Below are positions 1-38,816 of a stretch of DNA of 64,000 nucleotides, piece by piece. The stretch covers positions 3,806,231 to 3,870,230 of the forward strand of contig NC_134033.1 of assembly GCF_964204645.1 (NCBI RefSeq). The letters run 5' to 3'. How positions within the stretch are numbered: position 1 is the stretch's first letter; the number at the start of each line of letters is the position of its first letter. The notes under the pieces were generated by a model that searched no databases, had not been told where the DNA came from, and saw only the letters and a list, made by a program, of their open reading frames with translations. Source of the DNA: Tubulanus polymorphus (taxonomy: Eukaryota; Animalia; Nemertea). The position numbers and the translations under genes were made by a program.

Positions 1-3000
1 TATGCTGACCAAATTGTTCATATCGCTTTCTGTATTTGAGTTGATTCTTACTATTTCGGCGCGGATGCTGTGACACATTTCTCTAGCACTCCGAATATTC
101 AAACCTCGATTGTTTTTCCAGTCGGTTAGTATTTGATAACATTGTCCAGAAATAGTTACCCAACCTCTTGGACAGGTTGAATTAATTAAAGTAATAGCGA
201 GAATCATTTGATCTATTGTTTTTTTCAAGTCTGTATTTGTTGAATTGTTCGCATCGTTTATCGTTGAATTGTGTTTGTTTTTGATGTCGATTCTCTCAGA
301 TTCACAAATGAATGTCGTGTGCGTCTCCTCGATTTGACACGGGAATCGAACCCAGTTCGCCGATCCTCGTGGATTATTCAGTATCATCGCCGTACACGGC
401 ATATTGACGTCATTTATCGGTTGTTTTCTCAGCGGAGATATCAATCCTCGAATAACTTCTGGTATCGTTTCATTAATGACAGGTTTATACCACTCTGTGT
501 AGCTCAATGGTTTACCGTCAGTCCACGTGTAATAACCATCATTCTGTTTCGTGAAGAAAACGAAATATATCATAACCTTTAAAAATCATCCTATTCTAAT
601 TCATATTTGAATACATTAGTCTTACCATCCATTTCAATCCAACCATTATTATGAGCGCTTTTAATGAGTACGCCATTCGGAGAAGTTCTGTAGCGAATAA
701 TCTTTTGATGGAAATCATTTCCTGTTCTGAGTTGATACTGAGTAGATGTCCCGCGTACTTCTGTCTACAGTATATTTCAGCGTTCTCCCAATTCAGACGT
801 TCATCTCTGATGAATTTGATGCAGGAAATTCCCGAATCCAGAAATCCTTGTTTACAGTAGAAATCATCGAAATGTTTAATCGGTAACGACTCGTGTAAAG
901 TGTATTGTATCTGAAAGGTGGGGATTCTATTCTTAACTTCAAAACGCAGAGAATTATCGTTCAAACTGTGGAATTTGAGTCCACGAACCGCGTTATTTTC
1001 ACATATTTTAGTTTCATGTTGGGTATCAATAAATTTGACAAGTTTTTCATTTAGGTACAGCACTAGTAGCTGTATCAAAATAATAGGATCATATCGACCG
1101 GATCTGTCTGTTTCGCATGAAACTGATCCAATAGATTTGACGATAAATCTGTAATATTGAAATATATTTTGTTGTATCGGGTTTTCAAATTTATAGGAAA
1201 TCGAGTCTGATTTACGTCCTGCCCGACCCGGGTAGTTCGGTGACTGAACGAGTCCACATTTATCTTTAGTAGTAACTGGTAGAAATGAACCGTCAAATCC
1301 AAAACTATCCGCTTTTTTCACTCCTAGACATTTACGACGTAGTTTAACTATTAGTGGTTCCTGCCAGAATCCAAACCCACCTGTGAAATCTACTGTGTTT
1401 AATACGAGACTGTTATTAAGAAACTGATTACTCAAGCTCAAAAACTGATCACATCGCCATGACATCCTGAGAAAACATCGGTCAATTTGATATTCGTGTT
1501 CCGATAATATGTGAATATTTTTCGAGCGAAGGCGTCGATTTTCAGGTGTAATCACGAGACAGCGTGACGTCATATTGATCTGACGTTCTTCTTCCTGTAG
1601 AACATAACCGTCACAATCAGTAGGAGCAAATTGAAGATATGAGCTACCAACTGTTAACTGATTGTTATAGTAATAAGCGTATGCTACTACAGTAACCGGT
1701 CCACCTGATGTAATCAGGCTGACGACAGATCGACCGTAGTATGAACCGGGACAATACGGACCATAGCGTCTAGCTGTGAAATTACTACCATCAAATATAT
1801 AAAAACCAGCTCGATCACAGTTCTCTGATAGCACTGTTAGTTTCAATTGTTCTTCATAGATGTTCACTTTCCAGTTAAGTTGTAATGTAGTTACACGATA
1901 CAATGTATTCTTTGATCTCGGGAACAAGCGATTAGCTGATATTGATTTTGTGTGAGAATTCTGAAATATAAGAGAATCGATTACAACATTTACACGTTTA
2001 CAATACGACAAATTCAAACTCTGTACGACCTCGATATTTTGATAATAGTTCAAAATGTCTCAATCAAATCTTAACTTATCTTCCACAAATCATCATAATT
2101 ACTCTGCGTAAACAACAAGTTCGTCCGAATATATTGAAATTTGGGTCACACATAACATTGTTATTCCAATTTTCTCGGTAAAGTTTCACTGGTCAAAATA
2201 GCCATTAAAATATAGATAATTACATTGATTCTATTACACGAACCAAATTTACAAATCACTGTAATAAACTTACCGATATCCATGGCTTGTTGACGTAGAC
2301 GTCTGATATTGTCATTGATTTCACCTCAAATTCTATTTTCAAATTCGATCTCGAATAATCCGATGTCGTTAAAACGCACAGAATCACGAGAAATCCGTCT
2401 GATTTTACACTCAGAGATTTAAGATGGTTAAAACTGAGTAAAATATCAGTTCTCACAATATGTAACCCTTCCTGTTTATATACACCAACGACACCTGGTG
2501 ACGAGACGAGATCACGTGACCAGTTGAAGACGATGTACTGCAGAACATCGACAGTGATAGACCAGCAGTATAAGTGTTTAGACTGAGTTACTATATGTGG
2601 TACTCCATCAATTGTAGTGAGCAGTCCTGATTTATTATAGACTTGAATTAACGGATTAGAGATGTTCCAATCTGATATTTTGTAAACTTGCACGAGTAAC
2701 TGCGACTTAACTCTACTAAAAAAATCAATACGTGCTTTATTAGTTTTAGTATAAAACGATGAAGGTAGATGTCCGGTTTGTTCTCGTATAAGAGCTATAG
2801 GTTCACTGGTGCTGTTCCATCCGTCGTAAATTTGAGGACGAGTTTTCATTGGATCCTCACCGGGACTTAATCTGAAATCTATCTGTATAAACGTTAAATT
2901 CATTGCAAGCCCGTCTGGCATCCCGATCCATTCAAACAACAATTTACATCGGAGGGTAGAAATCATGAATTCATAACCTGTTTGAGTTGGTAATTCTTTT

Positions 3001-3491
3001 ACTGCATGTTTGTAACATGTATGTACGATTTTCAAACGACTCTGTTCTTCAAAACGATATATGATATAAACCCGACTACCTCGCGCTACATCGACGTTAC
3101 TCCTAAACAACAACGAAATCAAATCGTTACAGCGGATATCTAGTTGTTTTCTTCCGGTAGCGCAGAGTTTGTTGTCGGACTCACTGATTAGAAGGTAGTT
3201 TTCGTTACAGAATATCGACGGCTCGATGTCGTAGTAAACTTGAACGAGAAAACTTCCCGGTAAAGAGCTGTTGACGAACCAACGACATTCGACACCGCGC
3301 ACTAACGACGGATAGTTCGGTGAAACGATGTAACCAGACGTAGAATCGACGGAGTATTGAGTGTTGTTACAAGATGAACTGACTGTAACAGACGCGGCTT
3401 CCTCGACAGAGTTTGCGCGATCAGCCCGCGTAAATATACAGTCTCCGCAAGCGATCAGTAAAACTACGAACAACGCTTTCATTCGCTGCAT
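1..3491 (-). CDS. GRL101/LGR-like GPCR, array copy 1 (5' part only: CUB, CUB-like and C-type lectin ectodomain; continues beyond window start)
   Basis: Exon 1 is 3491-2274 (signal peptide MKALFVVLLIACG; CUB motif SGYIVSPNYP..CRW). Donor GTAAGT at 2273, acceptor ttatatttcAG at 1961. Exon 2 is 1960-626 (CUB-like; CTL start LNWENAEIYC..GHLLSINSEQE). Intron 625-544. Exon 3 starts at 543 (NDGYYTWTDGKPLSYTEW). Both complete exons are multiples of 3 and collinear with copies 2-4. Confidence 0.85.
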
Positions 3492-4020: not shown

Positions 4021-4148
4021 CAAGTAAGACGACGATGACAGCGGTAGAATAGAAACCGTGCTTATAACGACCCAACAAATGCAGCAAATACCGATAACGT
4101 ATTTCGGAGTTATAATTGGACTTCTAGAAAACGGGTTGACGATATTTA
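4021..4148 (-). repeat. Detached copy of the GPCR TM3-TM4 coding segment upstream of copy 1
   Basis: Near-identical to 8594-8718 (IVNPFSRSPIITPKYVIGICCICW.VISTVSILPLSSSSY). Equivalents at ~14896-14985, ~30234-30550 and ~39379-39585. Confidence 0.85.
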
Positions 4149-4237
4149 GATATATACGATATTTAGAATTGAGAGATATGTTAAAGCAGCCTCTATATAT
4201 TATTACTCTTGATGATTTGAATAAATAAAAATAACTG

Positions 4238-4377
<140 letters not shown>

Positions 4378-8153: not shown

Positions 8154-11100
8154 CTACTTCTTTTGTTGACGTTTATATCTCGTTCTAATTGATTTCATAT
8201 CGATAGTTAGTATTGTATATAGAAGCGGATTCAGAGACGAGTTGATCGGTAAAAATAGAACGGCCAGCCAAGCGGCCACCTGGTTCGGTATGTCGACCGA
8301 AAATACGGCGCAAAACTGAACGATTATTATCGGTAGCCAGCAAAATAAATTACAAAGATTGATTACTAAACTCCTTCGAGCTAAAACCAGTTCGGTAGGA
8401 TCGGCTCTACCCGAACCCGACCTACTTCCAGATACGAGTCTATACATCTGAGCGTACGTCGTCATTATCGCAGCCAATATGGCCGCATTGAACAAGGCAA
8501 AAATAGCGAATGAATAGTGCCAGCCATTGACGTCGATCGTCAGTAAATTCATAGGCAAACAAACTCCGGTTGTACCGTAAAAATTGTCTCCGAAGTAAGA
8601 CGACGATGACAGCGGTAGAATAGAAACTGTGCTTATAACGAGCCAACAAATACAGCAAATACCGATAACGTATTTCGGAGTTATAATCGGACTTCTAGAA
8701 AACGGGTTGACGATATTTGAATATCTCTGACGCGTTAGAATTAAGAGAAAAGTTAAGGAACCTTCGCACGAAACGGTGACAATAACCCCGGCGAGACGAC
8801 ATAATGAGCTATCCGTCCAGGCTTCAGAATTCAGATAATAAACGCCTTTGAACGCGTGGTCAGCTCCTGCGATCAAAAACAAATAGACCGACATCAGAAA
8901 ATCACAACCGGCAATATTTATGATGAGGACATCTGAAGATGTGTTACGTGTTCCGGTGGATTTCATCCGCAAAGCTTGAACGCGAAATAAAATAACGATA
9001 CTGTTAGCGAGAAAACTGAAAGATGCGATCATCCAGATGATGGCCCTCAGTACAGTGTTACCCATCAGGTCAGAGCAGGTGGAAAATTGATCAGCTTCGG
9101 GGAGACATCGGTCAACATTCGGTGCCATGCAGCAAAATTTGTAAGCATCCGAAGCGAGGTATTTCAATGATGTAAGATCGCCAAGGACGTTTCTTTGTAC
9201 GGATATTACTTCAAAATTGTTGACAAGGTCTAGAATTTCAAGTCGAGCCAATCCCGAAAAAGCATAGCTAGAAATATAATGGATTCTGTTACTGCTGATA
9301 TTTAATGTCTGTAATGCGGATAAACCTTTAAATACATTTTCACCGAGAACCGATATAGAAAGTCCGTGAAGATCGAGAACAGTAAGTGACGTCAGACCTC
9401 GGAAACTACCGTCTTCTAAATGTTGCAGCGGATTTCCGATAAGAAATAGTTGTTTTATAGCGATCAAACCTGCGAATGTATTAGCAGATAATGATGTTAT
9501 GCGGTTGTGTGTAAGGTCTAATGTGTATAGATTGTTTAGATTAGAAAACGCATTTGGAACGATGTAAGATAAATTATTGCCTGAAATGTCGAGAAAACGA
9601 AGATAAATGAAAGAGTTTAACATCGATTCGTTAAATACGACTCGGTTATTCGACAAAATCAAAACCCGAGTTGATTCTATAAAACGACCAGTAATATCTG
9701 ATAAAAGGGCATTTTCACAATCGATGAAATGACCACGGCAATTACAACGTTCAGAACACGTGACCTTACAGTATGTCTCGTCATCCGAGTTATGTTTACA
9801 ATTTACGACTCCGTCGCAGACTTCAGATTGCGGAATACATCGATTTTCCTGGCCACATTTAAACATTCCCGGACACGACCAAGTCTCGCAGTTTCGTTCA
9901 TCTTCAGAATTAGGACAATCGGATCGACCGTCACAAACGTGTCTGATCGGTATACAGTAAGATGCCGGACATTTTACAGTACCAGCCGCGCATTCGAAGT
10001 CATTACACGCGAGTATATGTTCAAGATTTCTACATACCGGGAAACCAATCGGCATCCTTTCTAAAATACACCTTTCGTGTCGGGAATAACAGCGAGGAGA
10101 ATTGAACGAACATCTTTGTTCATCCGATTCCTTACACAGATCTGTGAAACGAGTCGTACAGTGATTGCCATTATTACAGTTAACATCGGGATTCAATGTC
10201 ATATTAGTGACCAATTCGTCTTCTTCGAGACTTCCGCTACAATCCACGACACCATCCCGATACAACTGAGAACTAATACATTCACCGTCCCCGCACGAGA
10301 AACCCTGACAAAGTTCGGCAGTGCATCCGATCTCATCGGAACCGTCTTTACAGTTGACTAGTCCGTCACATCGTTTATAACTATCGATACATTGGTGATT
10401 GGAACAGCGATATCGCGTAGATAAACACGGTGGATGATAGCACGAGTTCTCATCTGATCCATCGACGCAATCTCTCATAAAGTCGCAGAAACCGCTAATC
10501 GATATAACCTGTCCATCGTTACAGCGGAACTGACTGTGTAAATTGATATCCGTACAATTGAGTTCATCTTCACCGTGTTGACAGTCGTGTATGGTATCAC
10601 ATACACGATGGTCGCTGATACATCTTCGATCGTTACATTCAAACTGCCACGATTTACAACCGCTTATAGAAGCTAACTCTTCACCAGTTACATTATAGGT
10701 ACATAACACGGAATGCGCTTTATCTTTTGTATCATCGAAAGGTTTTAATATCCATTTAACCGATTGAATATACGTAATTTCATTTCTGGTCACCAGTGGT
10801 TTGATAACTTTAAATCCGTCGTGGCCCATCGTCAAAATAGCGCCATATTGATGTCGATATTGAAATTCGCTGACCAAATTGTTCATATCGCTTTCAGTAT
10901 TTGAAGTGAGTCTTACTATTTCGGCGCGGACGCTGTGACACATTTCTCTAGCACTCCGAATATTCAAACCTCGATTGTTTTTCCAGTCGGTTTGTATTTG
11001 ATAACATTGTCCGGAAATAGTTACCCAACCTCTTGGACAGGTTGAATTAATCAAAGTAACATCGGGAATCATTTGATCTATGGTTTTATTTAGTTCTGTA

Positions 11101-14100
11101 TTTGTTGAATTGTTCGCGTCGTTTATCGTTGAATTGTGTTTGTTTTTGATGTCGATTCTCTCAGATTCACAAATGAATGTCGTGTGCGTCTCCTCGATTT
11201 GACACGGGAATCGAACCCAGTTCGCCAATCCTCGTGGATTATTCAGTATCATCGCCGTACACGGCATATTCACGTCATTTATCGGTTGTTTTCTTAGCGG
11301 AGATATCAATCCTCGAATAACTTCCGGTATCGTTTCATTAATAACAGGTTTATACCACTCTGTGTAGCTCAATGGTTTACCGTCAGTCCACGTGTAATAA
11401 CCATCATTCTGTTTCGTGAAGAAAATGAAATATATTATTTCTTTAAATTCTATCTTTTCAAATTAATTTTTGAATGCATTAGTCTTACCTGCCAATTCAA
11501 TCCAATCATCATTATGAGTGCTTTTAATGTGTACGCCATTCGGAGAAGTTTTGTAGCGAATAATCTTTTGATTAAAATCATTTCCTGTTCTGAGTTGATA
11601 CTGAGTAGATGTCCCGCGTACCTCTGTCTACAGTATATTTCAGCGTTTTCCCAATTCAGACGTTCATCTCTGATGAATTTGATGCAAGAAATTCCCGAAT
11701 CCAGAAATCCTTGTTTACAGTAGAAATCATCGAAATGTTTAATCGGTAACGACTCGTGTAAAGTGTATTGTATTTGAAATGTCGGAATTCTATTGTTTAC
11801 TTCAAAACGTAAAGTATTATCTGATATACTATAAAATATAAGTCCACGAACCGCGTTATTTTCACATATTAAAGTTTCATGTTGAGTTTCAATGGTTTTG
11901 AAATATTTCCCATTAAGAAAGGGTTCGTAATTGATTGATTGTATCAAAATGATCGGATCTTTTCGACCGAATCTGTCTGTTTCACATGAAACTGATCCAA
12001 TAGATTTGACGATAAATCTGTAATATTGAAATATATTTTGTTGTAACGGGTTTTCAAATTTATAGAGCATAGATTCTGATGTACGTCCTGCCCGACCCGG
12101 GTAGTTCGGTGACTGCACGAGTCCACATTTATCTTTAGTAGTAACTGGGAGAGGGGAACCAGGCAATCCAAAACTCTCCGATTTTTTCACTCCTAGACAT
12201 TTACGACGTAGTTTAACTATTAGTAGATACCGCCAGAATCCAATCTCATAAACTGTGAAATCTACAGTGTTTAATACGAGACTGTTATTAAGAAACTGAT
12301 TACTCAAACTCAGAAAAAGATCACATGACAATGACATCTTGAGAAAACATAGATCAATTTGATATTCGTGTTCTGATAATATGTGAATATTTTTCGAGCG
12401 AAGGCGTCGATTTTCAGGAGTAATCACGAGACAGTATGACGTCATATTGATCTGACGTTCTTCTTCCTGTAGAACATAACCGTCACAATCAGTAGGAGCA
12501 AATATAAGAGATGAGCTACCAACTGTTAACTGATTGTTATAGTAATAAGCGTATGCTACTACAGTAACCGGTCCACCTGAAATAATCAGGCTGACGACAA
12601 ATCGACCGTATGAACCAGGACAATACGGACCATAGCGTCTAGCTGTGAAATTACTGCCATCAAATATATAAAAACCAGCTCGATCACAGTTTTCTGATAA
12701 CACTGATAGTTTCAACTGTTGTGATTCATAGATGTTCACTTTCCAGTTTAGTTGTAATGTAGTTACACGATACAATTTATTCTTTGATCTCGGGAACAAT
12801 TGATTGGCTGACCAGTAACCCGTAAACTGAAATATAAGGGAATTGATTACAGCATTAAACGTTTACAATAAAACAATTTCAAACTTTGTACGACCTCGAT
12901 ATATTGATGATAGTACAAAATGTAGCTATCGAAACTTAACTTAAATTCCTCCACAAATCATCATAATTACTCTGCGTAAACAACAAGTGCGTCCGAATGT
13001 ATTGAAATTTGGGTCACATATAACGTTGTTATTCCAAGTTTCTCGGTAAAGTTTCACTGGTCAAAATCGCCATCAAAATCATAGATAATTACAATGATTC
13101 TATAACACGAACCTAATCTACAAATCACTGTAATAAACTTACCAATATCCTTGGCTTGTTGACGTAGACGTCTGATATTGTCATTGATTTCACTTCAAAT
13201 TCTATTTTCAAATTCGATCTTAAAAAATCCGATGTCGTCAAAACGCACAGAATCACGAGAAATCCGTCTGATTTTACACTCAGAGATTTGAGATGGTTAA
13301 AACTGAGTAAAATATCAGTTCTAACAATCCGTAACCCTTCCTGTTTATATACACCTACGACACCTGGTGACGAGTCGAGATCACGTGTCCAGTTGAAGAC
13401 GACGTACTGCAGAACATCGACTGTGATAGACCAGCAGTATAAGTGTTTAGACTGAGTTACTATATCTGGTATTCCATCAATTGTAGTGAGCAGTCCTGAT
13501 TCATTATAGACTTGAATTAACGGGTTAGAGATGTTCCAATCTGATATTTTGTAAACTTGCACGAATAACTGCGACGTAAACCACTCTTTATTTTCAAATT
13601 CTACACACGCTTTATTAGTTTTAGTATAAAACGATGAAGGCGGATGTCCGGTTTGTTCTCGTATAAGAGCTATAGGTTCACTGGTGCTGTTCCATCCGTC
13701 GTGAATTTGAGGACGAGTTTTCATCGGATCCTCACCTGGTCTTAATCTAAAATCTATCTGTATAAACGTAAAATTCATTGCAAACCCGTCTGGCATCCCG
13801 ATCCATTCTAACAACAATTTACATCGCCGGGTAGAAATCCTGAATTCATAACCTGTTTGAGTTGGTAATTCTTTTACTGCACGTTTGTAGCATGTGTGTA
13901 AGATTTTCAAGCGACTCTGTTCTTCAAAACGATATATGATATAAACCCGACTACCTCGCGCTCCATCGACGTTACTCCTAAACAACAACGAAATCAACCC
14001 GTTACTGCGGATATCTAGTCGTTTTTTTCCGGTAGCGCAGAGTTTGTTTTCGGACTCACCGACGAGAAGGTAGTTTTCGTTACAGAATATCGACGGCTCG

Positions 14101-14366: not shown

Positions 14367-15289
14367 ATTGAACACAATTCACGCTTCAAAACAAACACTT
14401 TACTAACTATTTCTAAGTTCGCACGACATTTCTCAAAAGAGTCGCTGCAAAGTAATGACGAATTCGCAAATGTCAGAAGTTGACGAATTGATCCAGAGTC
14501 CAATTATTTTGTAAAAGTTCTCCCATCAAACTGGCGCCAGACTCGTATTTGTGAAACTTTCATCTGTTCTCGGTTTTGCTGTAATTACCGCGGTTTCTAA
14601 ATTTAGACGTGTTTCAATATATCGTGTTTATAATCATGTGCAATTATTTCTCTAAAAATATTTACTGTCGTTCCGAACTGCGTTCAGTTTGTGATAATAT
14701 TCGATGACATTTTGTATATATACCTCAAAATATTCTGCGTCTCTGTAAAACACTTCGTCGATATCTGTTTTGATAATTCACACTCTACAGTCAATATAAT
14801 AACTGAGTTGAGGCTAATCGAAGCGGGTGGGTATCTGATTGTGGTGAGTAATAGGTCTTGTTCGGTACAGATTGTTTTGAAGAAACAAAAGCAACCAAGT
14901 AAGACGGGGATGACAGCGGTAGAATAGAAACAGAGAAATGTTAGGAATCTTTAGTTAGGAAACTGTTGCAATAACCCCGGCGAGAATCTGACTCGCGCAC
15001 TCTGATTCGGTCCGTTCTAAATTTGTCCCGTTTCGGACCCGGACCCGTTTAGAACGGTCTAACTGCTTCGTAGTGTGAACGCGACGAAATTCCAACCAAT
15101 AATAAATGAGGTGAATTGATAATTCCGAAACTTCTGATCATCATTTAAAAATGTTTAATTTGACTCAATTTAGATTAGTCCAATCTAGCAGAGAGGCAGC
15201 TGTGATGAAGTCTTGTTAACCTGTCGCGAAAAAGACTCCATTAGAACGATAACCGCACTCAAACGTGATGAACGGATAATAAGATAAAA

Positions 15290-15470: not shown

Positions 15471-15677
15471 TAAATAATTAGTGTTTGGCAAGACTCTATT
15501 ATTGGTCTTGTTGCTGTACTGGTGACTAGTACGTGTTTACAATGTCGGCAACGATCCAAACTGAACCGCTTTGTAAGCTTTAACTTCGATACCCGACGCC
15601 GATGTCAAGCCGGCAAAATGTAAAGATCGACTTTGAAGGTTCACTATGTATTATTCAGAGTAAGACTTTCGCTACTT

Positions 15678-22216: not shown

Positions 22217-22341
22217 CAAGGGCGGTTTGCTATCATCAAAACTATGAACAAATGAAAGTTAGTATTAATAAACTGTGAATCTGTTTCTGAGATTAAAACT
22301 GAAATATATTTTTGAACCAGAGGTCACCCCGGAAAAAATGA

Positions 22342-23460: not shown

Positions 23461-23463
23461 TTG

Positions 23464-26400
23464 CTACTGAAGTGTTCTACTTTTTTGTTGACGATTATAT
23501 CTCGGTCTAATTGATTTCATATCGATCGTCAGTATTGTATAAAGAAGCGGATTCAGAGACGAGTTGATCGGTAAAAATAGAACGGCCAGCCAAGCGGCCA
23601 CCTGGTTCGGTATCTCGACCGAAAAGACGGCGCAAAACTGAACGATTATTATCGGTAGCCAGCAAAATAAATTACAAAGATTGATTACTAAACTCCTTCG
23701 AGCTAAAACCAGTTCGGTAGGATCGGCTCTACCCGAACCCGACCTACTCCCAGATACGAGTCTATACATCTGGGCGTACGTCGTCATTATCGTAGCCAAT
23801 ATGGCCGAATTAAACAAGGCAAAAATAGCGAATGAATAGTGCCAGCCATTGACGTCGATCGTCAGTAAATTCATAGGCAAACAAACTCCGGTTGTACCGT
23901 AAAAATTGTCTCCGAAGTAAGACGACGATGACAGCGGTAGAATAGAAACTGTGCTTATAACGACCCAACAAATGCAGCAAATACCGATAACGTATTTCGG
24001 AGTTATAATCGCACTTCTAGAAAACGGGTTGACGATATTTGAATATCTCTGACGCGTTAGAATTAAGAGAAAAGTTAAGGAACCTTCGCACGAAACGGTG
24101 ACTATAACCCCGGCGAGACGACATAATGAGCTATCCGTCCAGGTTTCAGAATTCAGATAATAAACGCCTTTGAACACGTAGTCAGCTCCTGCGATCAAAA
24201 ACAAATAGACCGACATCAGAAAATCACAACCGGCAATATTTATGATGAGGATGTCTGAAGATGCGTTACGTGTTCCGGGGGATTCCATCCGCAAAGCTTG
24301 AACGCGAAATACAATAACGATACTGTTAGCGAGAAAACTGAAAGATGCGATCATCCAGATGACGGCTCTCAGTACAGCGTTACCCATCAGGTCAGAGCAG
24401 GTCGAAAATTGATCAGCCTCGGGAAGACATCGGTCGACATTCGGTGCCATGCAGCAAAATTTGTAAGCATCCGAAGCGAGGTATCTCAATGATGTAAGAT
24501 CGCCAAGAACGTTTCTTTTTACGAATATCACTTCGGAATTGTTGACGAGATCTAAAATTTCGAGTTTAGCCAGTCCAGAAAAAGCATAGCTGGAAATATA
24601 ATGTATTCTGTTATTACTGATATTTAACGACTGTAATGTGGATAAACCTTTAAATACATTTTCACCGAGAACCGATATAGAAAGTCCGTGAAGATCGAGA
24701 ACAGTAAGTGACGTCAGACCTCGGAAACTACCGTCTTCTAAATGTTGCAGCGGATTTCCGATAAGAAATAGTTCTTTTAAACCGATCAAACCTGCGAATG
24801 TATTAGCAGATAATGATGTTATGCGGTTGTGAGTAAGGTCTAATGCGCATAGATTGTTTAGATTAGAAAACGCGTTTGGAACGATGTAAGACAAATTATT
24901 GCCTGAAATGTCGAGAAAACGAAGATAAATGAAAGGGTTTAACATCGATTCGTTAAATACGACTCGGTTATTCGACAAAATCAAAGCCCGAGTTGATTCT
25001 ATAAAACGACCAGTAATATCTGATAAAAGAGCATTTTCACAATCGATGAAATGACCCCGGCAATTACAACGCTCAGGACACGTGACCTTACAGTATGATT
25101 CGTCATCCGAGTTATGTTTACAATTAACGACACCGTCGCAAACTTCAGATTGCGGAATACAACGATTTTCCTGACCACATTTAAACATTCCCGGACACGA
25201 CCAAATCTCGCAGTTTCGTTCATCTTCTGAATTAGGACAATCGGATCGACCGTCACAAACGTGTCTGATCGGTATACAGTAAGATGCCGGACATTTTACA
25301 GTACCAGCCGCGCATTCGAAGTCATTACACGCGAGTATATGTTCAAGATTTCTACATACCGGGAAACCAATCGGCATCCTTTCTAAAATACACCTTTCGT
25401 GTCGGAAATAACAGCGAGGAGAATTGAACGAACATCTTTGTTCATCCGATTCCTTACACAGATCTGTGAAACGAGTCGTACAGTGATTGTCATTATTACA
25501 GTAAACCTCGGGATTCACTGTCATATTAGTGACCAATTCGTCTTCTTCGAGACTTCCGCTACAATCCACGACACCATCCCGATACAACTGAGAACTAATA
25601 CATTCACCGTCCGCGCACGAGAACCCCTGGCAATTTTCGGCATTGCATCCGATCTCATCGGAACCGTCTTTACAGTTGGCTAGTCCGTCACATCGTTTAT
25701 AACTATCGATACATTTGTGATTGGAACAGCGATATTGCGTAGATAAACACGGTGGATGATAGCAAGAGTTCTCATCCGAGCCATCGACGCAATCTCTCAT
25801 GAAGTCGCAGAAACCGCTAATCGATATAACCTGTCCATCTTTACAGCGGAACTGACTGTGTAGGTTGATATCCGTACAATCGAGTTCATCTTCACCGTGT
25901 TGACAGTCGTGTCTGGTATCACATACGCGATGGTCGCTGATACATCTTTGATCGTTACATTCAAACTGCCACGATTTACAACCGCTTATAGAAGCTAACT
26001 CTTCACCAGTTACATTATAGGTACACAACACGGAATACACTTTATCTTTTGTATTATCGAAAGGTTTCAATAACCATTTAAGCGATTGAATATAATTAAT
26101 TTCATTTCTTGTCACCAGTGGTTTGATAATTTTAGATCCGTCGCGGTCCATTGTCAGTATAGCGCCATATTGATGGCGATATTGAAATTTGTTGATCAAA
26201 TTTTTCATATCACTTTCTATATTTAAGTTGATTCTTACTATTTCGGTGCGGATGCTGTGACACATTTCTCTGGCACTCCGAATATTCAAACCTCGATTGT
26301 TTTTCCAGTCGGTTAGTATGTGATAACATTGTCCGGTAATAGTTACCCAACCTCTTGGACAGGTTGAATTTATTAAAGTAACATCGGGAATGATTTGATC

Positions 26401-29400
26401 TATGGTTTTATTTAAGCCTGTATTTGTTGAATTGTTCGCGTCGTTTATCGTTGAATTGTGTTTGTTTTTGATGTCGATTCTCTCAGATTCACAAATGAAT
26501 GTCGTGTGCGTCTCCTCGATTTGACACGGGAATCGAACCCAGTTCGCTGATCCTCGTGGATTATTCAGTATCATCGCCGTACACGGCATATTGACGTCAT
26601 TAATCGGTTGTTTTCTTAGCGGAGATATCAATCCTCGAATAACTTCTGGTATCGTTTCATTAATAACAGGTTTATACCACTCTGCGTAGCTTAATGGTTT
26701 ACCGTCAGTCCACGTGTAATAACCATCATTCTGTTTCGTGAAGAAAATGAAATATATATCATTCTCTTTAAAAACCTTTCTTTTCTAATTCATATTTGAA
26801 TACATTAGTCTTACCTGCCATTTCAATCCAATCATCATTATGAGCGCTTTTAATGTGTACGCCATTCGGAGAAGTTCTGTAGCGAATAATCTTTTGATGG
26901 GAATCATTTCCTGTTCTGAGTTGATACTGAGTAGATGTCCCGCGTACTTCAGTCTACAGTATATTTCAGCGTTCTCCCAATTCAGACGTTCATCTCTAAT
27001 GAATTTGATGCAGGAAATTCCGGAATCCAGAAATCCTTGTTTACAGTAGAAATCATCGAAATGTTTAATCGGTAACGACTCGTGTAAAGTGTATTGTATT
27101 TGAAATGTCGGAATGTAATTCCTTACTTCAAAACGCAGAGTATTATCTGTTAAACTATAAAATATAAGTCCACGAACCGCGTTATTATCACATATTTTAG
27201 TTTCATGTTGGGTTAAAATGGTTTTGTAATATTTTCCATTTAGAAAGAGGTCGTAATTTATTGTTTGTATCAAAATGATCGGATCATTCTCGACCCTGCT
27301 GTTTGTTTCGCATGAAATTGATCCAATAAATTTGACAATAAATCTGTAATATTGAAATATTTTTTGTTGTATCGGGTTTTCGAATTTATAGGAAATCGAT
27401 TTTGATGTACGTCCTGCCCAACCCGGGTAGTTCGGTGACTGCACGAGTCCACATTTATCTTTAGTAGTAACTGGAAGACGGGATCCAAGAAATCCAGAAC
27501 TATCGGCTTTTTTCACTCCTAGACATTTACGACGTAGTTTAACTATTAGTGGTTCCTGCCAGAATCCAATCTCATAAACTGTGAAATCTACAGTGTTTAA
27601 TACGAGACTGTTATTAAGAAACTGATTACTCAAACTCAGAAACTGATCACATCGCCATGACATCTTGAGAAAACATCGGTCAATTTGATATTCGTGTTCT
27701 GATAATATGTGAATATTTTTCGAGCGAAGGCGTCGATTTTCAGGTGTAATCACGAGACAGTGTGACGTCATATTGATCTGACGTTCTTCATCCTGTAGAA
27801 CGTAACCGTCACAATCAGTAGGAGCTAATTTAAGATATGACCTGCTGGGATCACCAACTGTTAACTGATTGTTATAGTAATAAGCGTATGCTACTACAGT
27901 AACCGGTCCACCTGATGTAATCAGGCTGACGACAGATCGACCGTAGTATGAACCAGGACAATACGGACCATAGCGTCTAGCTGTGAAATTACTACCATCA
28001 AATATATAAAAACCAGCTCGACCACAGTTTTCTGATAACACTGTTAGTTTCAACTGTTCTTCATAGATGTTCACTTTCCAGTTTAGTTGTAATGTAGTTA
28101 CACGATACAATGTATTCTTTGTTCTCGGGAACAATCGATTATCTGATATTGAGTTTGTGAGTGAATGCTGGAATATAAGAGAATTGATTACAACATTGAA
28201 CGTTTACAATACGACAATTTCAAACCAATCACAACCTGAAAATATCGATGATAGTTGTAATCCAAAATAAATTTAAATTCTTACACAAATCATCATAATT
28301 ACTCTGCGTAAACAACAAGTGCGTCCGAATATATTGTAATTTGGGTCACACATAACATTGTTATTCCAATTTTTTCGATAAAGTTTCGCTGGTCAATATC
28401 GCCATCAAAATCATAGATTATTACAATGATTCTATTACACGAACCTAATTTACAAATTCACTGTAATAAACTTACCGATATCTGTGGCTTGTTGACGTAG
28501 ACGTCTGATATTGTCATCGATTTCGCTTCAAATTCTATTTTCAAATTCGATCTTAAGTAATCCGATGTCGTTAAAACGCACAGAATCACGAGAAATCCGT
28601 CTGATTTTACACTCAGGGATTTAAGATGGTTAAAACTGAGTAAAATATCAGTTTTCACAATACGTAACCCTTCCTGTTTATATACACCAACGACACCTGG
28701 TGACGAGACGAGATCACGCGTCCAGTTGAAGACGACGTACTGCAGAACATCGACTGTGATAGACCAGCAGTATAAGTGTTTAGACTGAGTTACTATATGT
28801 GGTATTCCATCAATTGTAGTGAGCAGTCCTGATTTATTGTAGACTTGAATTAACGGGTTAGAGATGTTCCAATCTGATATTTGGTAAACTTGCACGAGTA
28901 ACTGTGACTTAAACGACAGTTTATTTGAAATGAATTCAATACGTGCTTTATTAGTTTTAGTATAAAACGATGAAGGCGGATGTCCGGTTTGTTCTCGTAT
29001 AAGAGCTATAGGTTCACTGGTTCTGTTCCATCCGTCGTAAATTTGAGGACGAGTTTTCATCGGATCCTCACCTGGTCTTAATCTGAAATCTATCTCTATA
29101 AACGTTAAATTCATTGCAAACCTGTCTGGCATCTCGATCCATTCAAACAACAATTTACATCGCCGAGTAGAAATTGTGAATTTATAACCTGTTTGAGTTG
29201 GTATTTCGTTTACTGCACGTTTTGAGCATTTATGTACAATTTTCAAACGACTCTGTTCTTCAAAACGATATATAATATAAAGCCGACTACCTCGCACTCC
29301 ATCGATGTTACTCCTAAACAACAACGAAATCAAATCGTTACTGCGGATATCTAGTTGTTTTCTTCCGGTAGCGCAGAGTTTGTTGTCGGACTCACCGACG

Positions 29401-29702
29401 AGTAGGTAGTTTTCGTTACAGAATATCGACGGCTCGATGTCGTAGTAAACGTGAACGAGAAAACTTCCCGGTAAAGAGCTGTTTACGAACCAACGGCATT
29501 CAACACCGCGCACTAACGACGGATAGTTCGGTGAAACGATGTAACCAGACGTAGAATCGACGGAGTATTGAGTGCTGTTACAAGATGAACTGACTGTAAC
29601 AGACGCGGCTTCCTCGGCAGAGTTTGCGCGATCAGTCCGCGTAAATATACAGTCTCCGCAAGCGATCAGTAAAACTACGAACAACGCTTTCATTCGCTGC
29701 AT
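23464..29702 (-). CDS. GRL101/LGR-like GPCR, array copy 3 (~1948 aa, apparently intact)
   Basis: Exons 29702-28476, 28167-26815 and 26730-23464. Same splice sites and domains as copy 2; no internal stops seen. Confidence 0.9.
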
Positions 29703-30539
29703 ATTGAACACAATTCACGCTTCAAAACAAATACATCTCTAACTATCTCCAAGTTTGCGCGACATTTCTCATAAGAGTCGTTGCAAAGTAATGACGAGTT
29801 GTCAGAATGTCAGAAGTTGACGAATTGATCGAGTCCAATTGTTTTGTAAAAAGATCTCCCATCAAACTGGCGCCAGTGTCGTATTTCTGTTACTTTCACC
29901 TGCGCTCGATTTCGCAGTAATTACCGCGGTTTCTAAATTTAGACGTGTTTCAATATATCGTGTTCTATAATCATGTGCAATTATTTCTCTAAAAATATTT
30001 ACTGTCACTCCCGAACTGCGTTCAGTTTGTGATAATATTCGACGACATTTTATATCTATACCTCAAAATATTCTGCGTCTCTGTAAAACACTTCGTCAAT
30101 ATCTGTTTCGACAATTCATACTCTACAGTCAATATGATAACTGAGTTGAAGCTAAGTGACGCGCGTGGATATCTGATTGTGGTGAGTAATAGGTCTTGTT
30201 TGGAACAGATTGTTTTGAAGAAACAATAGCAACAAAGTAAGACGGGGATGACAGCGGTAGATCCGGAATCTACACCTCGGAATACATCTTCCTACCAAGT
30301 TTAGAAGGAATCAGAGAAAAAATTATCTGTGGATATCTGATTCTGGCGGGTGAGGACTGGTTCGGTACTAACTTTTCGCAGAGCCAACGCCAACCAAGTA
30401 AGACTCGGATGACAGCGGTAGAAAAGAAACTGTGCTTATAACGAGCCAACAAATGCAGCAAATACCGATAACGTATTTTGGAGTTATGATTGGACAGCTA
30501 GAAAACGGGTTGACGAAATTTGAATATCTCTGACGTGAA

Positions 30540-30638
30540 AGAATTAAGTGAAAAATCAAAGCAGTCTCTATTCATCACTCTTGATGGCTAGAATTTATGA
30601 ATACAAATAACAGTATTTCCTGCTGCTGCTGCCGCTAC

Positions 30639-30674
<36 letters not shown>

Positions 30675-32581: not shown

Positions 32582-35500
32582 TTATTTACTGGATGTCGTC
32601 AATCCTAGTCGTCGTTTATTGCGTTCACGAATAGATTTCATATCGATTGTAAGTATTGTATAAAGAAGCGGATTCAGAGACGAGTTGATCGGTAAAAATA
32701 GAACGGCCAGCCAAGCGGCCACCTGGTTCGGTATCTCGACCGAAAATACGGCGCAAAACTGAACGATTATTATCGGTAGCCAGCAAAATAGATTACAAAG
32801 ATTGATTACTAAACTCCTTCGAGCTAAAACCAGTTCGGTAGGATCGGCTCTACCCGAGCCCGACCTACTTCCGGATACGAGTCTATACATCTGAGCGTAC
32901 GTCGTCATTATCGTAGCCAATATGGCCGCATTAAACAAGGCAAAAATAGCGAATGAATAGTGCCAGCCATTGACGTCGATCGTCAGTAAATTCATAGGCA
33001 AACAAACTCCGGTTGTACCGTAAAAATTGTGTCCGAAGTAAGACGACGATGACAGCGGTAGAATAGAAACTGTGCTCATAACGAGCCAACAAATGCAGCA
33101 AATCCCGATAACGTATTTAGGAGTTATGATCGGACTTCTAGAAAACGGGTTGACGATATTTGAATATCTCTGACGCGTTAGAATTAAGAGAAAAGTCAGG
33201 GAACCTTCGCACGAAACGGTGACAATAACCCCGGCGAGACGACATAATGAGCTATCCGTCCAGGCTTCAGAGTTCAGATAATAAACGCCTTTGAATGCGT
33301 GGTCAGCTCCCGCGATCAAAAACAAATAGACCGACATCAGAAAATCACAACCGGCAATATTTATGATGAGGATGTCTGAAGATGTGTTACGTGTTCCGGA
33401 GGATTCCATCCGCAAAGCTTGAACGCGAAATAAGATAACGTTACTGTTAGCGAGAAAACTGAAAGATGCGATCATCCAGATGATGGCTCTCAGTACAGCG
33501 TTACCCATCAGGTCAGAGCAGGTGGAAAATTGATCAGCTTCGGGAAGACATCGGTCAACATTCGGTGCCATGCAGCAAAATTTGTAAGCATCCGAAGCGA
33601 GGTATTTCAATGATGTAAGATCGCCAAGAACGTTTCTTTTTACGAATATCACTTCGGAATTGTTGACGAGGTCTAGAATTTCTAGTTTAGTCAGTCCAGA
33701 AAAAGCATAACTGGAAATATAATGTATTCTGTTACTGCTGATATTTAACGACTGTAATGCGGATAAACCTTTAAATACATTTTCGCCGAGAACCGATATA
33801 GAAAGTCCGTGAAGATCGAGAACAGTAAGTGACGTCACACCTCGGAAACTACCGTCTTCTAAATGTTGCAGCGGATTTCCGATAAGAAATAGTTCTTTTA
33901 AACCGATCAAACCTGCGAATGTATTAGCAGATAATGATGTTATGCGGTTGTGTGTAAGGTCTAATGTGTATAGATTGTTCAGATTAGAAAACGCGTTTGG
34001 AACGATGTAAGACAAATTATTGCCCGAAATATCGAGAAAACGAAGATAAATGAAAGAGTTGAACGTCGACTCGTTAAATACGACTCGGTTATTCGACAAA
34101 ATCAAAACCCGAGTTGATTCTATAAAACGACCAGTAATATCTGATAAAAGAGCATTTTCACAATCGATGAAATGACCCCGGCAATTACAACGTTCAGGAC
34201 ACGTGACCTTACAGTATGACTCGTCATCCGAGTTATGTTTACAATTTATGACACCGTCGCAAACTTCAGATTGCGGAATACATCGATTTTCCTGGCCACA
34301 TTTAAACATTCCCGGACACGACCAAGTCTCGCAGTTTCGTTCATCTTCTGAATTAGGACAATCTGATCGACCGTCACAAACGTGTCTGATCGGTATACAG
34401 TAAGATGCCGGACATTTTGCAGTACCAGCCGCGCATTCGAAATCATTACACGCGAGTATATGTTCAAGATTTCTACATACCGGGAAATCAATCGGCATCC
34501 TTTCTAAAATACACCTTTCGTGTCGGGAATAACAGCGAGGAGAATTGAACGAACATCTTTGTTCATCCGATTCCTTACACAGATCTGTGAAACGAGTCGT
34601 ACAGTGATTCTCATTATTACAGTAAACCTCGGGATTCACTGTCATATTAGTAACCAATTCGTCTTCTTCGAGACTTCCGCTACAATCCACGACACCATCC
34701 CGATACAACTGAGAACTAATACATTCACCGTCCGCGCACGAGAACCCCTGACAAAGTTCGGCAGTCCATCCGATCTCATCGAAACCGTCTTTACAGTTGG
34801 CTAGTCCGTCACATCGTTTATAACTATCGATACATTGGTGATTGGAACAGCGATATTGGGTAGATAAACACGGTGGATGATAGCACGAGTTCTCATCCGA
34901 GCCATCGATGCGATCTCTCATGAAGTCGCAGAAACCGCTAATCGATATAACTTGTCCATCGTTACAGCGGAACTGACTGTGTAAATTGATATCCGTACAA
35001 TCGAGTTCATCTTCACCGTGTTGACAATCGTTTCTGGTATCACATACGCGATGGTCGCTGATACATCTTTGATCGTTACATTTAAACTGCCACGGTTTAC
35101 AACCGCTTACAGAAGCTAACTCTTTAACAGTTACATTATAGGTACACATCAAGGAATGCACTTTATCTTTTGTCTTATCGAAAGGTTTCAATAACCATTT
35201 AACTGATTGAATATAAGTAATTTCATTTCTGGTCACCAGTGGTTTGATAACTTTAAACCCGTCGCGGTCCATCGTCAGAATAGCGCCGTATTGATGTCGA
35301 TATTGAAATTCGTTGATCAAATTTTTCAAGTCGCTTTCTGTATTTGAGGTGATTCTTACTATTTCGGCGCGGATGCTGTGACACATTTCTCTAGCACTCC
35401 GAATATTCAAACCTCGATTGTTTTTCCAGTCGGTTAGTATTTGATAACATTGTCCGGAGATAGTTACCCAACCTCTTGGACAGGTTGAATTAATTAAAGT

Positions 35501-38500
35501 AACATCGGGAATCATTTGATCTATGGTTTTATTTAAATCTGTATTTGTTGAATTGTTCGCGTCGTTTATCGTTGAATTGTGTTTGTTTTTGACGTCGATT
35601 CTCTCGGATTCACAAATGAATGTCGTGTGCGTCTCCTCGATTTGACACGGGAATCGAACCCAGTTCGCTGATCTTCGTGGATTATTCAGTATCATCGCCG
35701 TACACGGCATATTGACGTCATTTATCGGTTGTTTTCTTAGCGGAGACATCAATCCTCGAATAACTTCTGGTATCGTTTCATTAATAACCGGTTTATACCA
35801 CTCTGTGTAGCTCAATGGTTTACCGTCAGTCCACGTGTAATAACCATCATTCTGTTTCGTGAAGAAAATGAAATATATCACTTCTTTAAAAATCTTTCGA
35901 TTTTAATTCATATTAGAATACATTAATCTTACCTGCCATTTCAATCCAATCATCATTATGAGCGCTTTTAATGTGTACGCCATTCGGAGAAGTTCTGTAG
36001 CGAATAATCTTTTGATTGAAATCATTTCCTGTTCTGAGTTGATACTGAGTAGATGTCCCGCGTACTTCTGTCCACAGTATATTTCAGCGTTCTCCCAATT
36101 CAGACGTTCATCTCTGATGAATTTGATGCAGGAAATTCCGGAATCCAGAAATTCTTGTTTACAGTAGATATCATCGAAATGTTTAATCGGTAACGACTCG
36201 TGTAAAGTGTATTGTATTTGAAATGTCGGAATTCTATTGTTTACCTCAAAACGCAAAGTATTATCTGTTAAACTATACAATATAAGTCCACGAACCGCGT
36301 TATTTTCACATATTAAAGTTTCGTGTTGGGTCCTAATAATTTTGATCAGTTTTCCATTTTGGAAGAGGTTGTACTTTATCAGCTGTATCAAAATGATCGG
36401 ATCATTCTCACGTATGTTGTTTGTTTCACATGAAACTGATCCAATAAATTTGACAATAAATCTGTAATATTGAAATATATTTTGTTCTATAGGGTTTTCA
36501 AATTTATATGAAATAGATTCTGATGTAAGTTCTGCCGGACCCGGGTAGTTCCGTGACTGCACGAGTCCACATTTATCTTAAGTAGTAACTGGGAGACGGG
36601 AACCGGCAAATCCAAAACTATCCGATTTTTTCACTCGTAGACATTTACGACGTAGTTTAACTGTTAGTGGTCGCCGCCAGAATACAAACTCACCTGTGAA
36701 ATCTACAGTGTTTAATACGAGACTGTTATTAAGAAACTGATTACTCAAACTCAGAAACTGGTCACATGACAATGACATCTTGAGAAAACATCTGTCAATT
36801 TGATATTCGTGTTCTGATAATATATCGATATTTTTCAAGCGAAGGCGTCGATTTTCAGGTGTAATCGCGAGACAGTGTGACGTCATATTGATCTGACGTT
36901 CTTCTTCCTGTAGAACATAACCATCACAATCAGTAGGAGCAAATCTAAGAATTGAGTTGCCGGTGTAACCAACTGTTAACTGATTGTTATAGTAATAAGC
37001 GTATGCTACTACAGTAACCGGTCCACCTGATGTAATCAGGCTGACGACAGATCGACCGTAGTATGAACCAGGACAATACGGACCATAGCGTCTAGCTGTG
37101 AAATTACTACCATCAAATATATAAAAACCAGCTCGATCACAGTTTTCTGATAGCACTGTTAGTTTCAACTGTTTTTCATAGATGTTCACTTTCCAGTTTA
37201 GTTGTAATGTAGTTACACGATACAATGTATTCTTTGATCTCGGGAACAATCGATTAGCTGATATTGAGTTTCTGTATGAATGCTGAAATATAAGAGAATT
37301 GATTACAACATTAAACGTTTACAATACAACAATTTCAAACTCTGTACGACCTTGATATATTGATAATACTTTAAAATGTTGCAATCAAATCTTAACTTAA
37401 ATTCTTCCACAAATCATCATAATTATTCTGCGTTAACATGTGAGTCGAAATATATTGAAATTTGGGTCACACATAACGTTGTTATTCCAAATTTCTCGGT
37501 AAAGTTTCATTGGTCAGAATCGCCATCAAAATCATAGATTATTACAATGATTCTATTAAACAAACCGAATTGACAAATCATTGTTATAAACTTACCCATA
37601 TCTGTGGCTTGTTGACGTAGACGTCTGATATTGTCATTGATTTCACTTCAAATTCTATTTTCAAATTGGATCTTAAAAAATCCGATGTCGTTAAAACGCA
37701 CAGAATCACGAGAAATCCGTCTGATTCTACACTCAGAGATTTAAGATGGTTAAAACTGAGTAAAATATCAGTTCTCACAATACGTAACCCTTCCTGTTTA
37801 TATACACCAACGACACCTGGTGACGAGTCGAGATCACGTGTCCAGTTGAAGACGACGTACTGCAGAACATCGACTGTGATAGACCAGCAGTATAAGTGTT
37901 TAGACTGAGTTACTATATGTGGTATTCCATCAATTGTAGTGAGCAGTCCTGATTTATTATAGACTTGAATTAACGGGTTAGAGATGTTCCAATCTGATAT
38001 TTTGTAAACTTGCACGAGTAACTGCGACTTTACTCTACTTGAAAAAAAATCAATACGTGCTTTATTAGTTTTAGTATAAAACGATGAAGGCGGATGTCCG
38101 GTTTGTTCTCGTATAAGAGCTATAGATTCACTGGTGCTGTTCCATCCGTCGTAAATTTGAGGACGAGTTTTTGTTGGATCCTCACCTGGTGTCAACCTGA
38201 AATCTATCTGTATAAACGTTAAATTCATTGCAAACCCGTCTGGCATCCCGATCCATTCTAACAACAATTTGCATCGCCGGGCAGAAATCATGAATCCATA
38301 ACCTGTTTGAGTTGGTAATTCTTTTACTGCATGCTTGTGACATGTATGTAAGATTTTCAAGCGACTTTGTTCTTCTAAACGATATATGATATAAACCCGA
38401 CTACCTCGCGCTCCATCGACGTTACTCCTAAACGACAACGAAATTAAATCGTTACTGCGGATATCCAGTTGTTTTCTTCCGGTAGCGCAGAGTTTGTTGT

Positions 38501-38816
38501 CGGACTCACCGATGAGAAGGTAGTTTTCGTTACAGAATATCGACGGCTCGATGTCGTAGTAAACTTGAACGAGAAAACTTCCCGGTAAAGAGCTGTTGAC
38601 GAACCAACGACATTCAACACCGCGCACTAACGACGGATAGTTCGGTGAAACGATGTAACCAGACGTAGAATCGACGGAGTATTGAGTGTTGTTACAAGAT
38701 GAACTGACTATAACAGACGCGGCTTCCTCGACAGAGTTTTCGCAATCAGCCCGCGTAAATATACAGTCTCCGCAAGCGATCAGTAAAACTACGAACAACG
38801 CTCTCATTCGCGGCAT
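32582..38816 (-). pseudogene. GRL101/LGR-like GPCR, array copy 4, with a premature stop in exon 2
   Basis: Exons 38816-37596, 37282-35933 and 35851-32582. AAA(K) is TAA at 36578-36580 (other copies read VTTKDKC). LDLa cysteines are lost (DRIDGSDE, DGFDEIGWT) and the C-terminal tail differs. Confidence 0.8.

What the first reader, a model, noticed from the sequence alone, without database searches (positions are those of the whole stretch)
626..38816. Tandem giant GPCRs with a near-constant signalling half and discrete hypervariable loops in the distal ectodomain
Seen in sequence: LDLa/LRR/7TM differ only by scattered substitutions, while exon 1-2 differences cluster in short patches with frame-preserving indels between nearly invariant framework. 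Copies 1/2/3/4 read: TVGSSYLQF / TVGSSSLIF / TVGDPSRSYLKL / TVGYTGNSILRF; ADSFGFDGSFLP / SESFGLPGSPLP / ADSSGFLGSRLP / SDSFGFAGSRLP; ETDRSGRYDP..LLVLYLNEKLVKFID / ETDRFGRKDP..SINYEPFLNGKYFKTIE / ETNSRVENDP..TINYDLFLNGKYYKTIL / ETNNIRENDP..LIKYNLFQNGKLIKIIR; IDFFSRVKS / VEFENKEWFTS / IEFISNKLSFKS / IDFFSSRVKS. Inference: a germline repertoire of receptors with CDR-like variable loops on CUB-type beta-sandwiches coupled to a common G-protein output, possibly for non-self, allo- or chemo-recognition.
Basis: partly seen in the sequence, partly recalled or inferred. Interest (0 to 1): 0.85.

Follow-up and report, generated by a model that had tools for sequence, protein, structure and literature searches.

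The report
Ribbon-worm variable-ectodomain GPCR gene array
A ribbon worm carries well over a hundred copies of a giant cell-surface receptor gene whose signalling end is conserved while particular residues of its outer modules have been selected to change and are shuffled between copies, which looks like an inherited set of varied sensors (immune or chemical) built on a receptor type already known to multiply in snails.

Summary
Observation confirmed. The window (almost certainly Tubulanus polymorphus) holds four minus-strand, three-exon genes for ~1,940-aa GRL101-like (type C2 LGR) receptors: signal peptide, about six CUB-like modules, two C-type-lectin-like domains, LDLa repeats, LRRs, 7TM. 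Copy 4 has an in-frame stop; copy 1 ends at an assembly gap. The genome holds at least 141 relatives. Codon models with local trees still find dN/dS>1 sites only in the distal ectodomain (2dlnL 101 against 1-30 in 13 null mosaic simulations), none in lectin/LDLa/LRR/7TM as a class. In two CUB-like domains they concentrate in the loops that bind ligands in solved CUBs (weak alignment; folding failed). Expression and ligands are untested. GRL101 expansions are published in snails; the distal ectodomain has no database homologue. The scan already reported this family from other windows of this genome. New variant of a known kind.

The parts
2274..3491 (-). Copy 1 exon 1: signal peptide, CUB (D1), CUB-like D2, D3
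   Evidence: Pfam CUB on the same exon of copy 3
626..1960 (-). Copy 1 exon 2: CUB-like D4-D6 and first half of lectin-like domain 1
1..543 (-). Copy 1 exon 3, cut by a 100-N assembly gap immediately before window position 1
   Evidence: L001
13143..14366 (-). Copy 2 exon 1 (intact gene, 1938 aa)
11489..12826 (-). Copy 2 exon 2
8154..11408 (-). Copy 2 exon 3: rest of lectin-like 1, lectin-like 2, 6 Pfam LDLa, LRRs, type C hinge, 7tm_1, short tail
28476..29702 (-). Copy 3 exon 1 (intact gene, 1948 aa)
26815..28167 (-). Copy 3 exon 2
23464..26730 (-). Copy 3 exon 3 (LDLa, LRR, 7tm_1)
37596..38816 (-). Copy 4 exon 1 (probable pseudogene)
35933..37282 (-). Copy 4 exon 2, with in-frame TAA at 36578-36580
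32582..35851 (-). Copy 4 exon 3; two LDLa cysteines are also substituted
13575..13595 (-).
13827..13889 (-). Variable sites of D2, columns 160-180, part aligned to CUB loop L3 (copy 2)
12800..13154 (-).
12500..12523 (-).
12149..12352 (-).
11780..12094 (-).
39379..39583 (-). Same-orientation fragment of the gene's own 7TM exon 560-770 nt upstream of the start codon, part of the repeated unit (also 4022-4184, 14897-14931, 30396-30554)

Best explanation
These are members of a lineage-specific, tandemly amplified family of GRL101-like (type C2) leucine-rich-repeat GPCRs that works as an inherited repertoire of sensors for large, variable foreign molecules (proteins or glycans of microbes, parasites, prey, predators or other individuals). 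Shown: the architecture, the copy number, birth and death of copies (7 of 22 complete copies broken), mosaic exchange between copies, purifying selection on LDLa-LRR-7TM and dN/dS>1 codons in modules D2-D6. Inferred: unequal crossing-over and gene conversion keep the framework alike and reshuffle binding-loop variants between copies, while selection keeps many old variants and drives new ones; the variable CUB-like surfaces bind the ligand; the conserved lectin-LDLa-LRR-hinge stalk passes the signal to the 7TM, as the LDLa module and hinge do in relaxin receptors (established knowledge). Within this reading I put host defence or non-self recognition at about 55% and contact or chemical sensing at about 45%.
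For: At least 141 7TM matches at 76% identity or more on C6, C8, C9, C11, C12, C22, C32, of 511 candidates; exons 1 and 2 match about 100 scored places each, of about 380 candidates. dN/dS 0.26 (0.21-0.33) in LDLa-7TM against 0.53 (0.45-0.63) in the distal ectodomain. Site models with a tree and a rate for each segment: 2dlnL 102-148 in columns 27-780, 1-3 in the lectin part, 3-9 in LDLa-7TM; null simulations with fine mosaic trees, local rates and dN/dS<=1 gave 1.3-30 in 13 runs against 101 observed, and at most 1.1 in 9 runs against 41 with 14-codon blocks. Single codons with 4-7 amino acids between nearly invariant neighbours and no indel (160, 209, 663, 764). Distances in different regions are nearly uncorrelated (Spearman mostly below 0.3) and the 22 copies carry 21 different combinations of block types. 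In D2 and D6, 15 of 25 selected sites lie in the 70 of 260 columns aligned to CUB loops L3/L5/L9 (Fisher p 0.0003; 11 of 19, p 0.005 with longer segments); odd-numbered loops form the ligand site of solved tandem CUBs (PMC8051872). Mollusc relatives carry ApeC, F5/8 type C, CUB and C-type lectin domains before LDLa-LRR-7TM (P0096, P0101); a cluster of lectin-LDL-LRR GRL101 genes lies in a schistosome-resistance region of Biomphalaria sudanica (PMC12297450).
Against: Patch-wide dN/dS is 0.49, the same as the rest of the ectodomain. Intron 1 is as diverse (p 0.21) as fourfold sites in the patches (0.23), so part of the pattern could be simple escape from homogenisation. Many variants differ by 2-3 bases in a codon, which can inflate site tests and was not simulated. 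The CUB alignments are weak (hhalign E 1e-4 to 7e-3 for D1, D6, D2; not significant for D3-D5), I drew the loop limits after seeing the sites, and loops vary more than strands in most proteins. The outermost CUB (D1) is conserved. In other animals GRL101 genes are expressed in tentacles and palps, which favours sensing over immunity (PMC6573481, PMC13403566, PMC6267866).
Confidence: 0.62

Rival explanations
1. Mostly neutral concerted evolution: a recently amplified GRL101 array is homogenised by gene conversion, and surface loops that tolerate change accumulate indels that block conversion locally, so they look hypervariable without selection for diversity.
For: dS rises with dN in the patches (0.56 vs 0.09); fourfold diversity 0.23 in patches vs 0.05-0.07 outside and 0.21 in intron 1; 7 of 22 copies broken; strong mosaicism.
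Against: Simulated mosaics with local rates and 48% neutral sites never reached the observed statistic; indel-free single codons carry up to seven amino acids; the equally recombining lectin, LDLa, LRR and 7TM parts give no such class; all indels in exons 1-2 keep the frame while 3 of the exon 3 indels do not.
Confidence: 0.2
2. Receptors for a co-diversifying family of the animal's own ligands (pheromones, gamete-recognition or allorecognition proteins, insulin/relaxin-like peptides), i.e. a self-recognition code rather than sensing of foreign molecules.
For: The nearest solved 7TM is the relaxin receptor RXFP1 (E 4e-39); type C2 LGRs have been suggested to bind insulin-like peptides (PMC6267866); CUB domains occur in gamete-recognition proteins (own knowledge).
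Against: The LRR and LDLa region, which binds peptide in relaxin receptors, is the conserved part; no ligand-like gene repeats with the unit in the window; more than 100 interchangeable mosaic copies fit a many-to-many repertoire better than one-to-one pairs.
Confidence: 0.13
3. Copy number and mosaics are inflated by assembly errors (uncollapsed haplotypes, chimeric joins).
For: C22 is a small unplaced contig whose copy is identical to copy 3 over 904 nt; there is a gap beside the window; some C6 matches recur with identical scores.
Against: Median distance between copies is 5.8% with a median longest identical tract of 199 nt, far from haplotype duplicates; each copy has its own intron and flank differences.
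Confidence: 0.05

Closest known systems
GRL101-like / type C2 leucine-rich-repeat GPCRs (Lymnaea GRL101; PMC4079206)
   Same: Several LDLa repeats, LRRs, type C hinge, class A 7TM nearest to RXFP1 among solved structures; 31-38% identity of the 7TM to GRL101-like proteins of molluscs and crustaceans.
   Different: About 1,100 extra residues in front (six CUB-like and two lectin-like modules), only three exons, long branch in the 7TM tree, over 141 copies.
Biomphalaria sudanica SudRes2 cluster of CTL-LDL-LRR GRL101 genes (PMC12297450)
   Same: Tandem cluster, lectin domain before LDL-LRR-7TM, copy-number and truncation differences, missed by automatic annotation, suspected role in recognition.
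   Different: 12 genes in 440 kb against about 55 on C9 alone; no CUB modules described; no site-level selection in the passages I read; there a link to a phenotype exists, here none.
Ampullariid (apple snail) GRL101 expansion (PMC6573481)
   Same: Lineage-specific tandem expansion, 29-132 genes per genome.
   Different: Shown to be expressed in tentacles and labial palps; ectodomain variation not described in the passage read.
Mollusc ApeC-F5/8C-CUB-CUB-CTL-LDLa-LRR-7TM proteins (Haliotis P0096, Saccostrea P0101; database models)
   Same: CUB and C-type lectin domains in the same order before LDLa-LRR-7TM; Tubulanus falls near them in the 7TM tree, support 94/93, placement unsure.
   Different: They have ApeC and F5/8C and two canonical CUBs; no detectable similarity to exon 2.
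Germline variable recognition families such as sea-urchin SpTransformer and TLRs, snail FREPs, plant NLR and receptor-kinase arrays (from memory, not tested)
   Same: Works like them: tandem arrays, mosaic exchange, selected sensor end, conserved output end, many pseudogenes.
   Different: Unrelated proteins; here the output is a class A GPCR. No sign of somatic rearrangement: each gene is complete in the genome.
Lophotrochozoan class A chemoreceptor expansions (PMC11886862)
   Same: Large lineage-specific class A GPCR expansions, notably in nemerteans (about 1,000-2,350 genes).
   Different: There selection is reported in the 7TM ligand pocket; here the 7TM is under purifying selection (dN/dS 0.23) and the ectodomain varies. 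That paper did not include Tubulanus and does not mention LGR or LDL.

Membership tests
LGR type C2 / GRL101-like | Rhodopsin-class 7TM of the LGR group | tested here: met
   Pfam 7tm_1 E 1e-22; best PDB match RXFP1 E 4e-39, then LH, TSH, FSH receptors E 1e-22 to 1e-16; CWLP and NPLLY motifs present.
LGR type C2 / GRL101-like | More than one LDLa repeat in front of the LRRs | tested here: met
   Six Pfam LDLa stretches.
LGR type C2 / GRL101-like | LRR ectodomain followed by a type C hinge | tested here: met
   LRR_8 E 1e-28; hinge aligns without gaps to that of RXFP1.
LGR type C2 / GRL101-like | 7TM groups with GRL101 rather than with type C1 relaxin receptors | tested here: inconclusive
   Tree of 16 fetched proteins places it among GRL101-like sequences on a long branch; no type C1 sequence was in the tree.
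LGR type C2 / GRL101-like | G-protein signalling and ligand | not testable with these tools
   Needs expression in cells.
CUB domain | Profile match to CUB for D1 | tested here: met
   Pfam CUB 22.2 bits, cut-off 21.4; MASP-1 CUB E 0.007; ESM Atlas features 0.94 to CUB clusters for exon 1.
CUB domain | Profile match or fold for D2-D6 | tested here: inconclusive
   No Pfam hit; hhalign to a 12-sequence CUB profile E 2e-4 (D6), 7e-3 (D2), 0.06-0.3 (D3-D5); Atlas 0.88 for exon 2, all ten named hits in one CUB family or clan; AlphaFold pLDDT 28-30.
C-type lectin domain | Profile match for the two domains before the LDLa repeats | tested here: inconclusive
   First half of domain 1: Pfam Lectin_C E 0.018, below cut-off, C-type-lectin-like chains in PDB E 0.002, mannose-receptor-like proteins E 1e-5. 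The domain is split by intron 2 and was searched only exon by exon. Domain 2 rests on motif resemblance only; sugar binding untested.
Diversified germline recognition repertoire (functional class) | Many paralogues, mosaic exchange, dN/dS>1 in the sensor part only | tested here: met
Diversified germline recognition repertoire (functional class) | Expression in recognising cells and ligand specificity that differs between copies | not testable with these tools
Antibody/VLR-like somatically diversified receptors | Incomplete germline gene with separate cassettes assembled somatically | tested here: not met
   Every copy is a complete three-exon gene; somatic change itself was not testable.

The most novel reading that the evidence does not exclude
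A GPCR-based innate recognition repertoire: hundreds of receptors whose CUB-like loops act as germline-encoded, recombinationally reshuffled binding sites for microbial, parasite or allogeneic molecules and feed one G-protein pathway, possibly with different copies expressed in different cells. That would be a new protein scaffold for diversified non-self recognition in spiralians.
Probability: 0.27. Interest if true: 0.85.

Novelty: new variant of a known kind. Interest (0 to 1): 0.6.

Why it matters
GRL101-like receptors are orphan GPCRs that have expanded repeatedly in molluscs, where they are tied either to sensory organs or to a parasite-resistance locus, and nobody knows their ligands. 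This nemertean family is at least as large as the largest published expansion, is almost absent from the public annotation (one garbled 689-aa model found; exon 2 has no relative among 1.84 billion cluster representatives), and offers many natural variants with a calibrated list of selected residues. That makes the question of what GRL101 ectodomains recognise testable by domain swaps on a shared 7TM, and shows that GPCR repertoires can diversify in a large ectodomain instead of the membrane pocket.

Tried and rejected
Patch-wide pairwise dN/dS (0.37-1.0) does not show positive selection; it is confounded by raised dS, so site models with local trees and null simulations were used. AlphaFold on exon 1 and exon 2 alignments gave pLDDT 28-30; no fold search was run on those models. 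Exon 2 found no homologue in either protein library. Pfam scans of D2-D6 one by one were blank. The spliced protein was never searched as a joined sequence; exons were searched by reference (one query used the natural open frame of L018 through its in-frame intron 2). Read-through or frameshifting at the exon 2/3 boundary was rejected: intron 2 has GT-AG ends and lengths that are often not multiples of three. A linked ligand gene in the repeat unit was sought and not found. Three paper searches for CUB plus lectin plus LGR expansions or loop names returned nothing.
Full report
Source. The window is G000:C9:3806231-3870230 of a 268-Mb assembly. The best protein match to exon 3 (96%) is an NCBI model of the nemertean Tubulanus polymorphus on a contig of 16,481,795 bases, the length of C9, so the organism is identified with little doubt.

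Observation. Four direct copies lie on the minus strand at about 92% nucleotide identity. Each has three exons and two phase-0 GT-AG introns, confirmed in 23 copies (window plus 20 fetched loci). Copies 2 and 3 are intact (1,938 and 1,948 aa). Copy 4 has a TAA stop at 36578-36580. Copy 1 ends at an assembly gap at the window's edge. Of 22 complete copies 15 are intact, four have a stop and three a frameshift.

Architecture. Exon 3 gives six Pfam LDLa, LRRs and 7tm_1; the hinge and 7TM are nearest to RXFP1 among solved structures (E 4e-39). This is the GRL101 / type C2 LGR layout (PMC4079206). In front lie two C-type-lectin-like domains (weak matches) and about 750 residues that divide into six modules of 110-130 aa. 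D1 is a Pfam CUB; D6 and D2 align to a small CUB profile (E 2e-4, 7e-3), D3-D5 do not significantly; language-model features point to CUB for both exons. Exon 2 has no homologue beyond its lectin end in 1.84 billion representatives or in the 5.8-billion set; the one NCBI model found is a garbled 689-aa fragment of one copy, so the family appears largely unannotated.

Family size. The 7TM finds 141 scored matches at 76% identity or more, of 511 candidates; about 55 on C9/C22 at 89-100% form this subfamily, the others lie on C6, C8, C11, C12 and C32. Exons 1 and 2 match the same places. 141 is a lower bound; earlier notes of the scan say about 300, which I could not count. The signalling half is near-constant within an array and 76-83% identical between arrays, still more conserved than exons 1-2 (60-67%).

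Pattern of variation. So the patches are real but their overall dN/dS is 0.49. Fourfold sites of unchanged codons differ at 23% in patches, 5-7% elsewhere, dropping within five codons; intron 1 differs at 21%, intron 2 at 13%. The patches are therefore old variants embedded in a framework that is kept alike. Recombination is pervasive: distances in different regions are almost uncorrelated, four-gamete incompatibility rises from 0.16 within 10 bases to 0.45 beyond 3 kb, block types are shared between otherwise different copies, and 22 copies show 21 combinations.

Selection. To allow for recombination and local dS, I fitted codon mixtures with a separate tree and rate for each segment of 14, 30 or 56 codons (own implementation of a GY94 model on a grid of dN/dS values). 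Allowing dN/dS>1 improves the fit by 2dlnL 102 and 148 in columns 27-780, by 1-3 in the lectin region and 3-9 in LDLa-LRR-7TM. Null data simulated on 14-codon mosaic trees with their own rates and dN/dS<=1 gave 1.3-30 in 13 runs at the 30-codon setting (observed 101), and at most 1.1 in 9 runs at the 14-codon setting (observed 41). Ten codons survive the strictest setting (180, 262, 410, 585, 643, 663, 704, 731, 753, 764). Several are single codons with 4-7 amino acids between invariant neighbours and without indels. Limits: few simulations, short-segment trees, alignment doubt in indel patches, and multi-base codon differences that were not modelled. D1, the outermost domain, and D3 are nearly free of selected sites; D2, the exon junction, D4, D5 and D6 hold them.

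Position on the fold. AlphaFold failed on both exons (pLDDT 28-30). By the CUB alignment, selected sites of D2 and D6 fall in the stretches matching loops L3, L5 and L9 more often than expected (15 of 25 in 27% of columns, p 0.0003). In solved tandem CUBs the odd-numbered loops lie at one end and form the ligand site (PMC8051872).

How it probably works. Shown: amplification, birth and death, exchange between copies, purifying selection on the stalk and 7TM, diversifying selection on part of the distal ectodomain. Inferred: variable CUB-like surfaces bind large ligands; the conserved LDLa-LRR-hinge unit activates the 7TM as in relaxin receptors; recombination recombines loop variants into new receptors in the germline. 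A fragment of the 7TM exon upstream of each start codon is a trace of, and possible substrate for, unequal crossing-over. Whether the ligands are microbial or parasitic, or cues from prey, predators or mates, cannot be told: mollusc relatives with ApeC, discoidin, CUB and lectin domains and the Biomphalaria resistance-linked cluster point to defence; tentacle and palp expression in apple snails, triton and starfish points to sensing. Unlike typical chemoreceptor expansions, where selection is reported in the 7TM pocket (PMC11886862), the pocket here is conserved, which argues against small odorants.

What was left out. The spliced model was searched exon by exon only; the joined search was left out.

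Novelty. Tandem GRL101 expansions, and lectin- and CUB-bearing GRL101 proteins, are known or in databases; I found no paper on this nemertean family or on selected, shuffled CUB loops in an LGR. The scan itself has noted the family in several other windows of this genome; those notes are not independent support. One of them reads the blocks as old variants rather than an arms race; my dS results agree, but the calibrated site tests show that selection for amino-acid change acts as well. Verdict: real, a new variant of a known kind, interest 0.6.

Noticed in passing
window 4022-4184, 14897-14931, 30396-30554, 39379-39583: A same-orientation piece of the gene's own 7TM exon (about TM3-TM4, 90% identical) sits 530-770 nt upstream of each start codon; the upstream block recurs at about 40 places of C9/C22.
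   Followed up: partly
window 18583-21281, minus strand: Between copies 2 and 3, exons with an ankyrin repeat and a stretch resembling the pore and last helix of a TRPV-like channel (weak Pfam Ank hit; channel likeness by eye).
   Followed up: no
window 44064-50498, minus strand: AT-rich (23-29% GC) Polinton/adintovirus-like stretch: A32-type packaging ATPase, rve integrase with chromodomain in two frames, several small ORFs. Observed only.
   Followed up: no
window 50496-64000: Chromodomain-bearing Ty3/Gypsy retrotransposon interrupted by a nested element with SCAN domain and integrase before RT (Gmr1-like order), whose 315-nt terminal repeats at 54234-54548 and 59489-59803 are identical, so the insertion is recent. 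A SCAN domain (E 7e-12) in a nemertean element is worth a look.
   Followed up: no
window 42965-43351, plus strand: Short ORF with a hydrophobic start and a weak PAN domain match.
   Followed up: no
L004 and L005 (C9 3.054 Mb plus, 4.155 Mb minus): Two copies 1.1 Mb apart in opposite orientation are 99% identical; several other pairs mirror each other, suggesting a large recent inverted duplication of the array.
   Followed up: no
alignment column 1682 (7TM part): One codon in the otherwise conserved 7TM region varies among T, S and P and scores as positively selected; three kinds of C-terminal tail occur.
   Followed up: no
L001 1-4110, beyond the gap before the window: Sequence not shared with the receptor array; another note of the scan (s1-500218) reports small secreted Cys-rich peptide genes there. 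No link to the receptors was found.
   Followed up: partly
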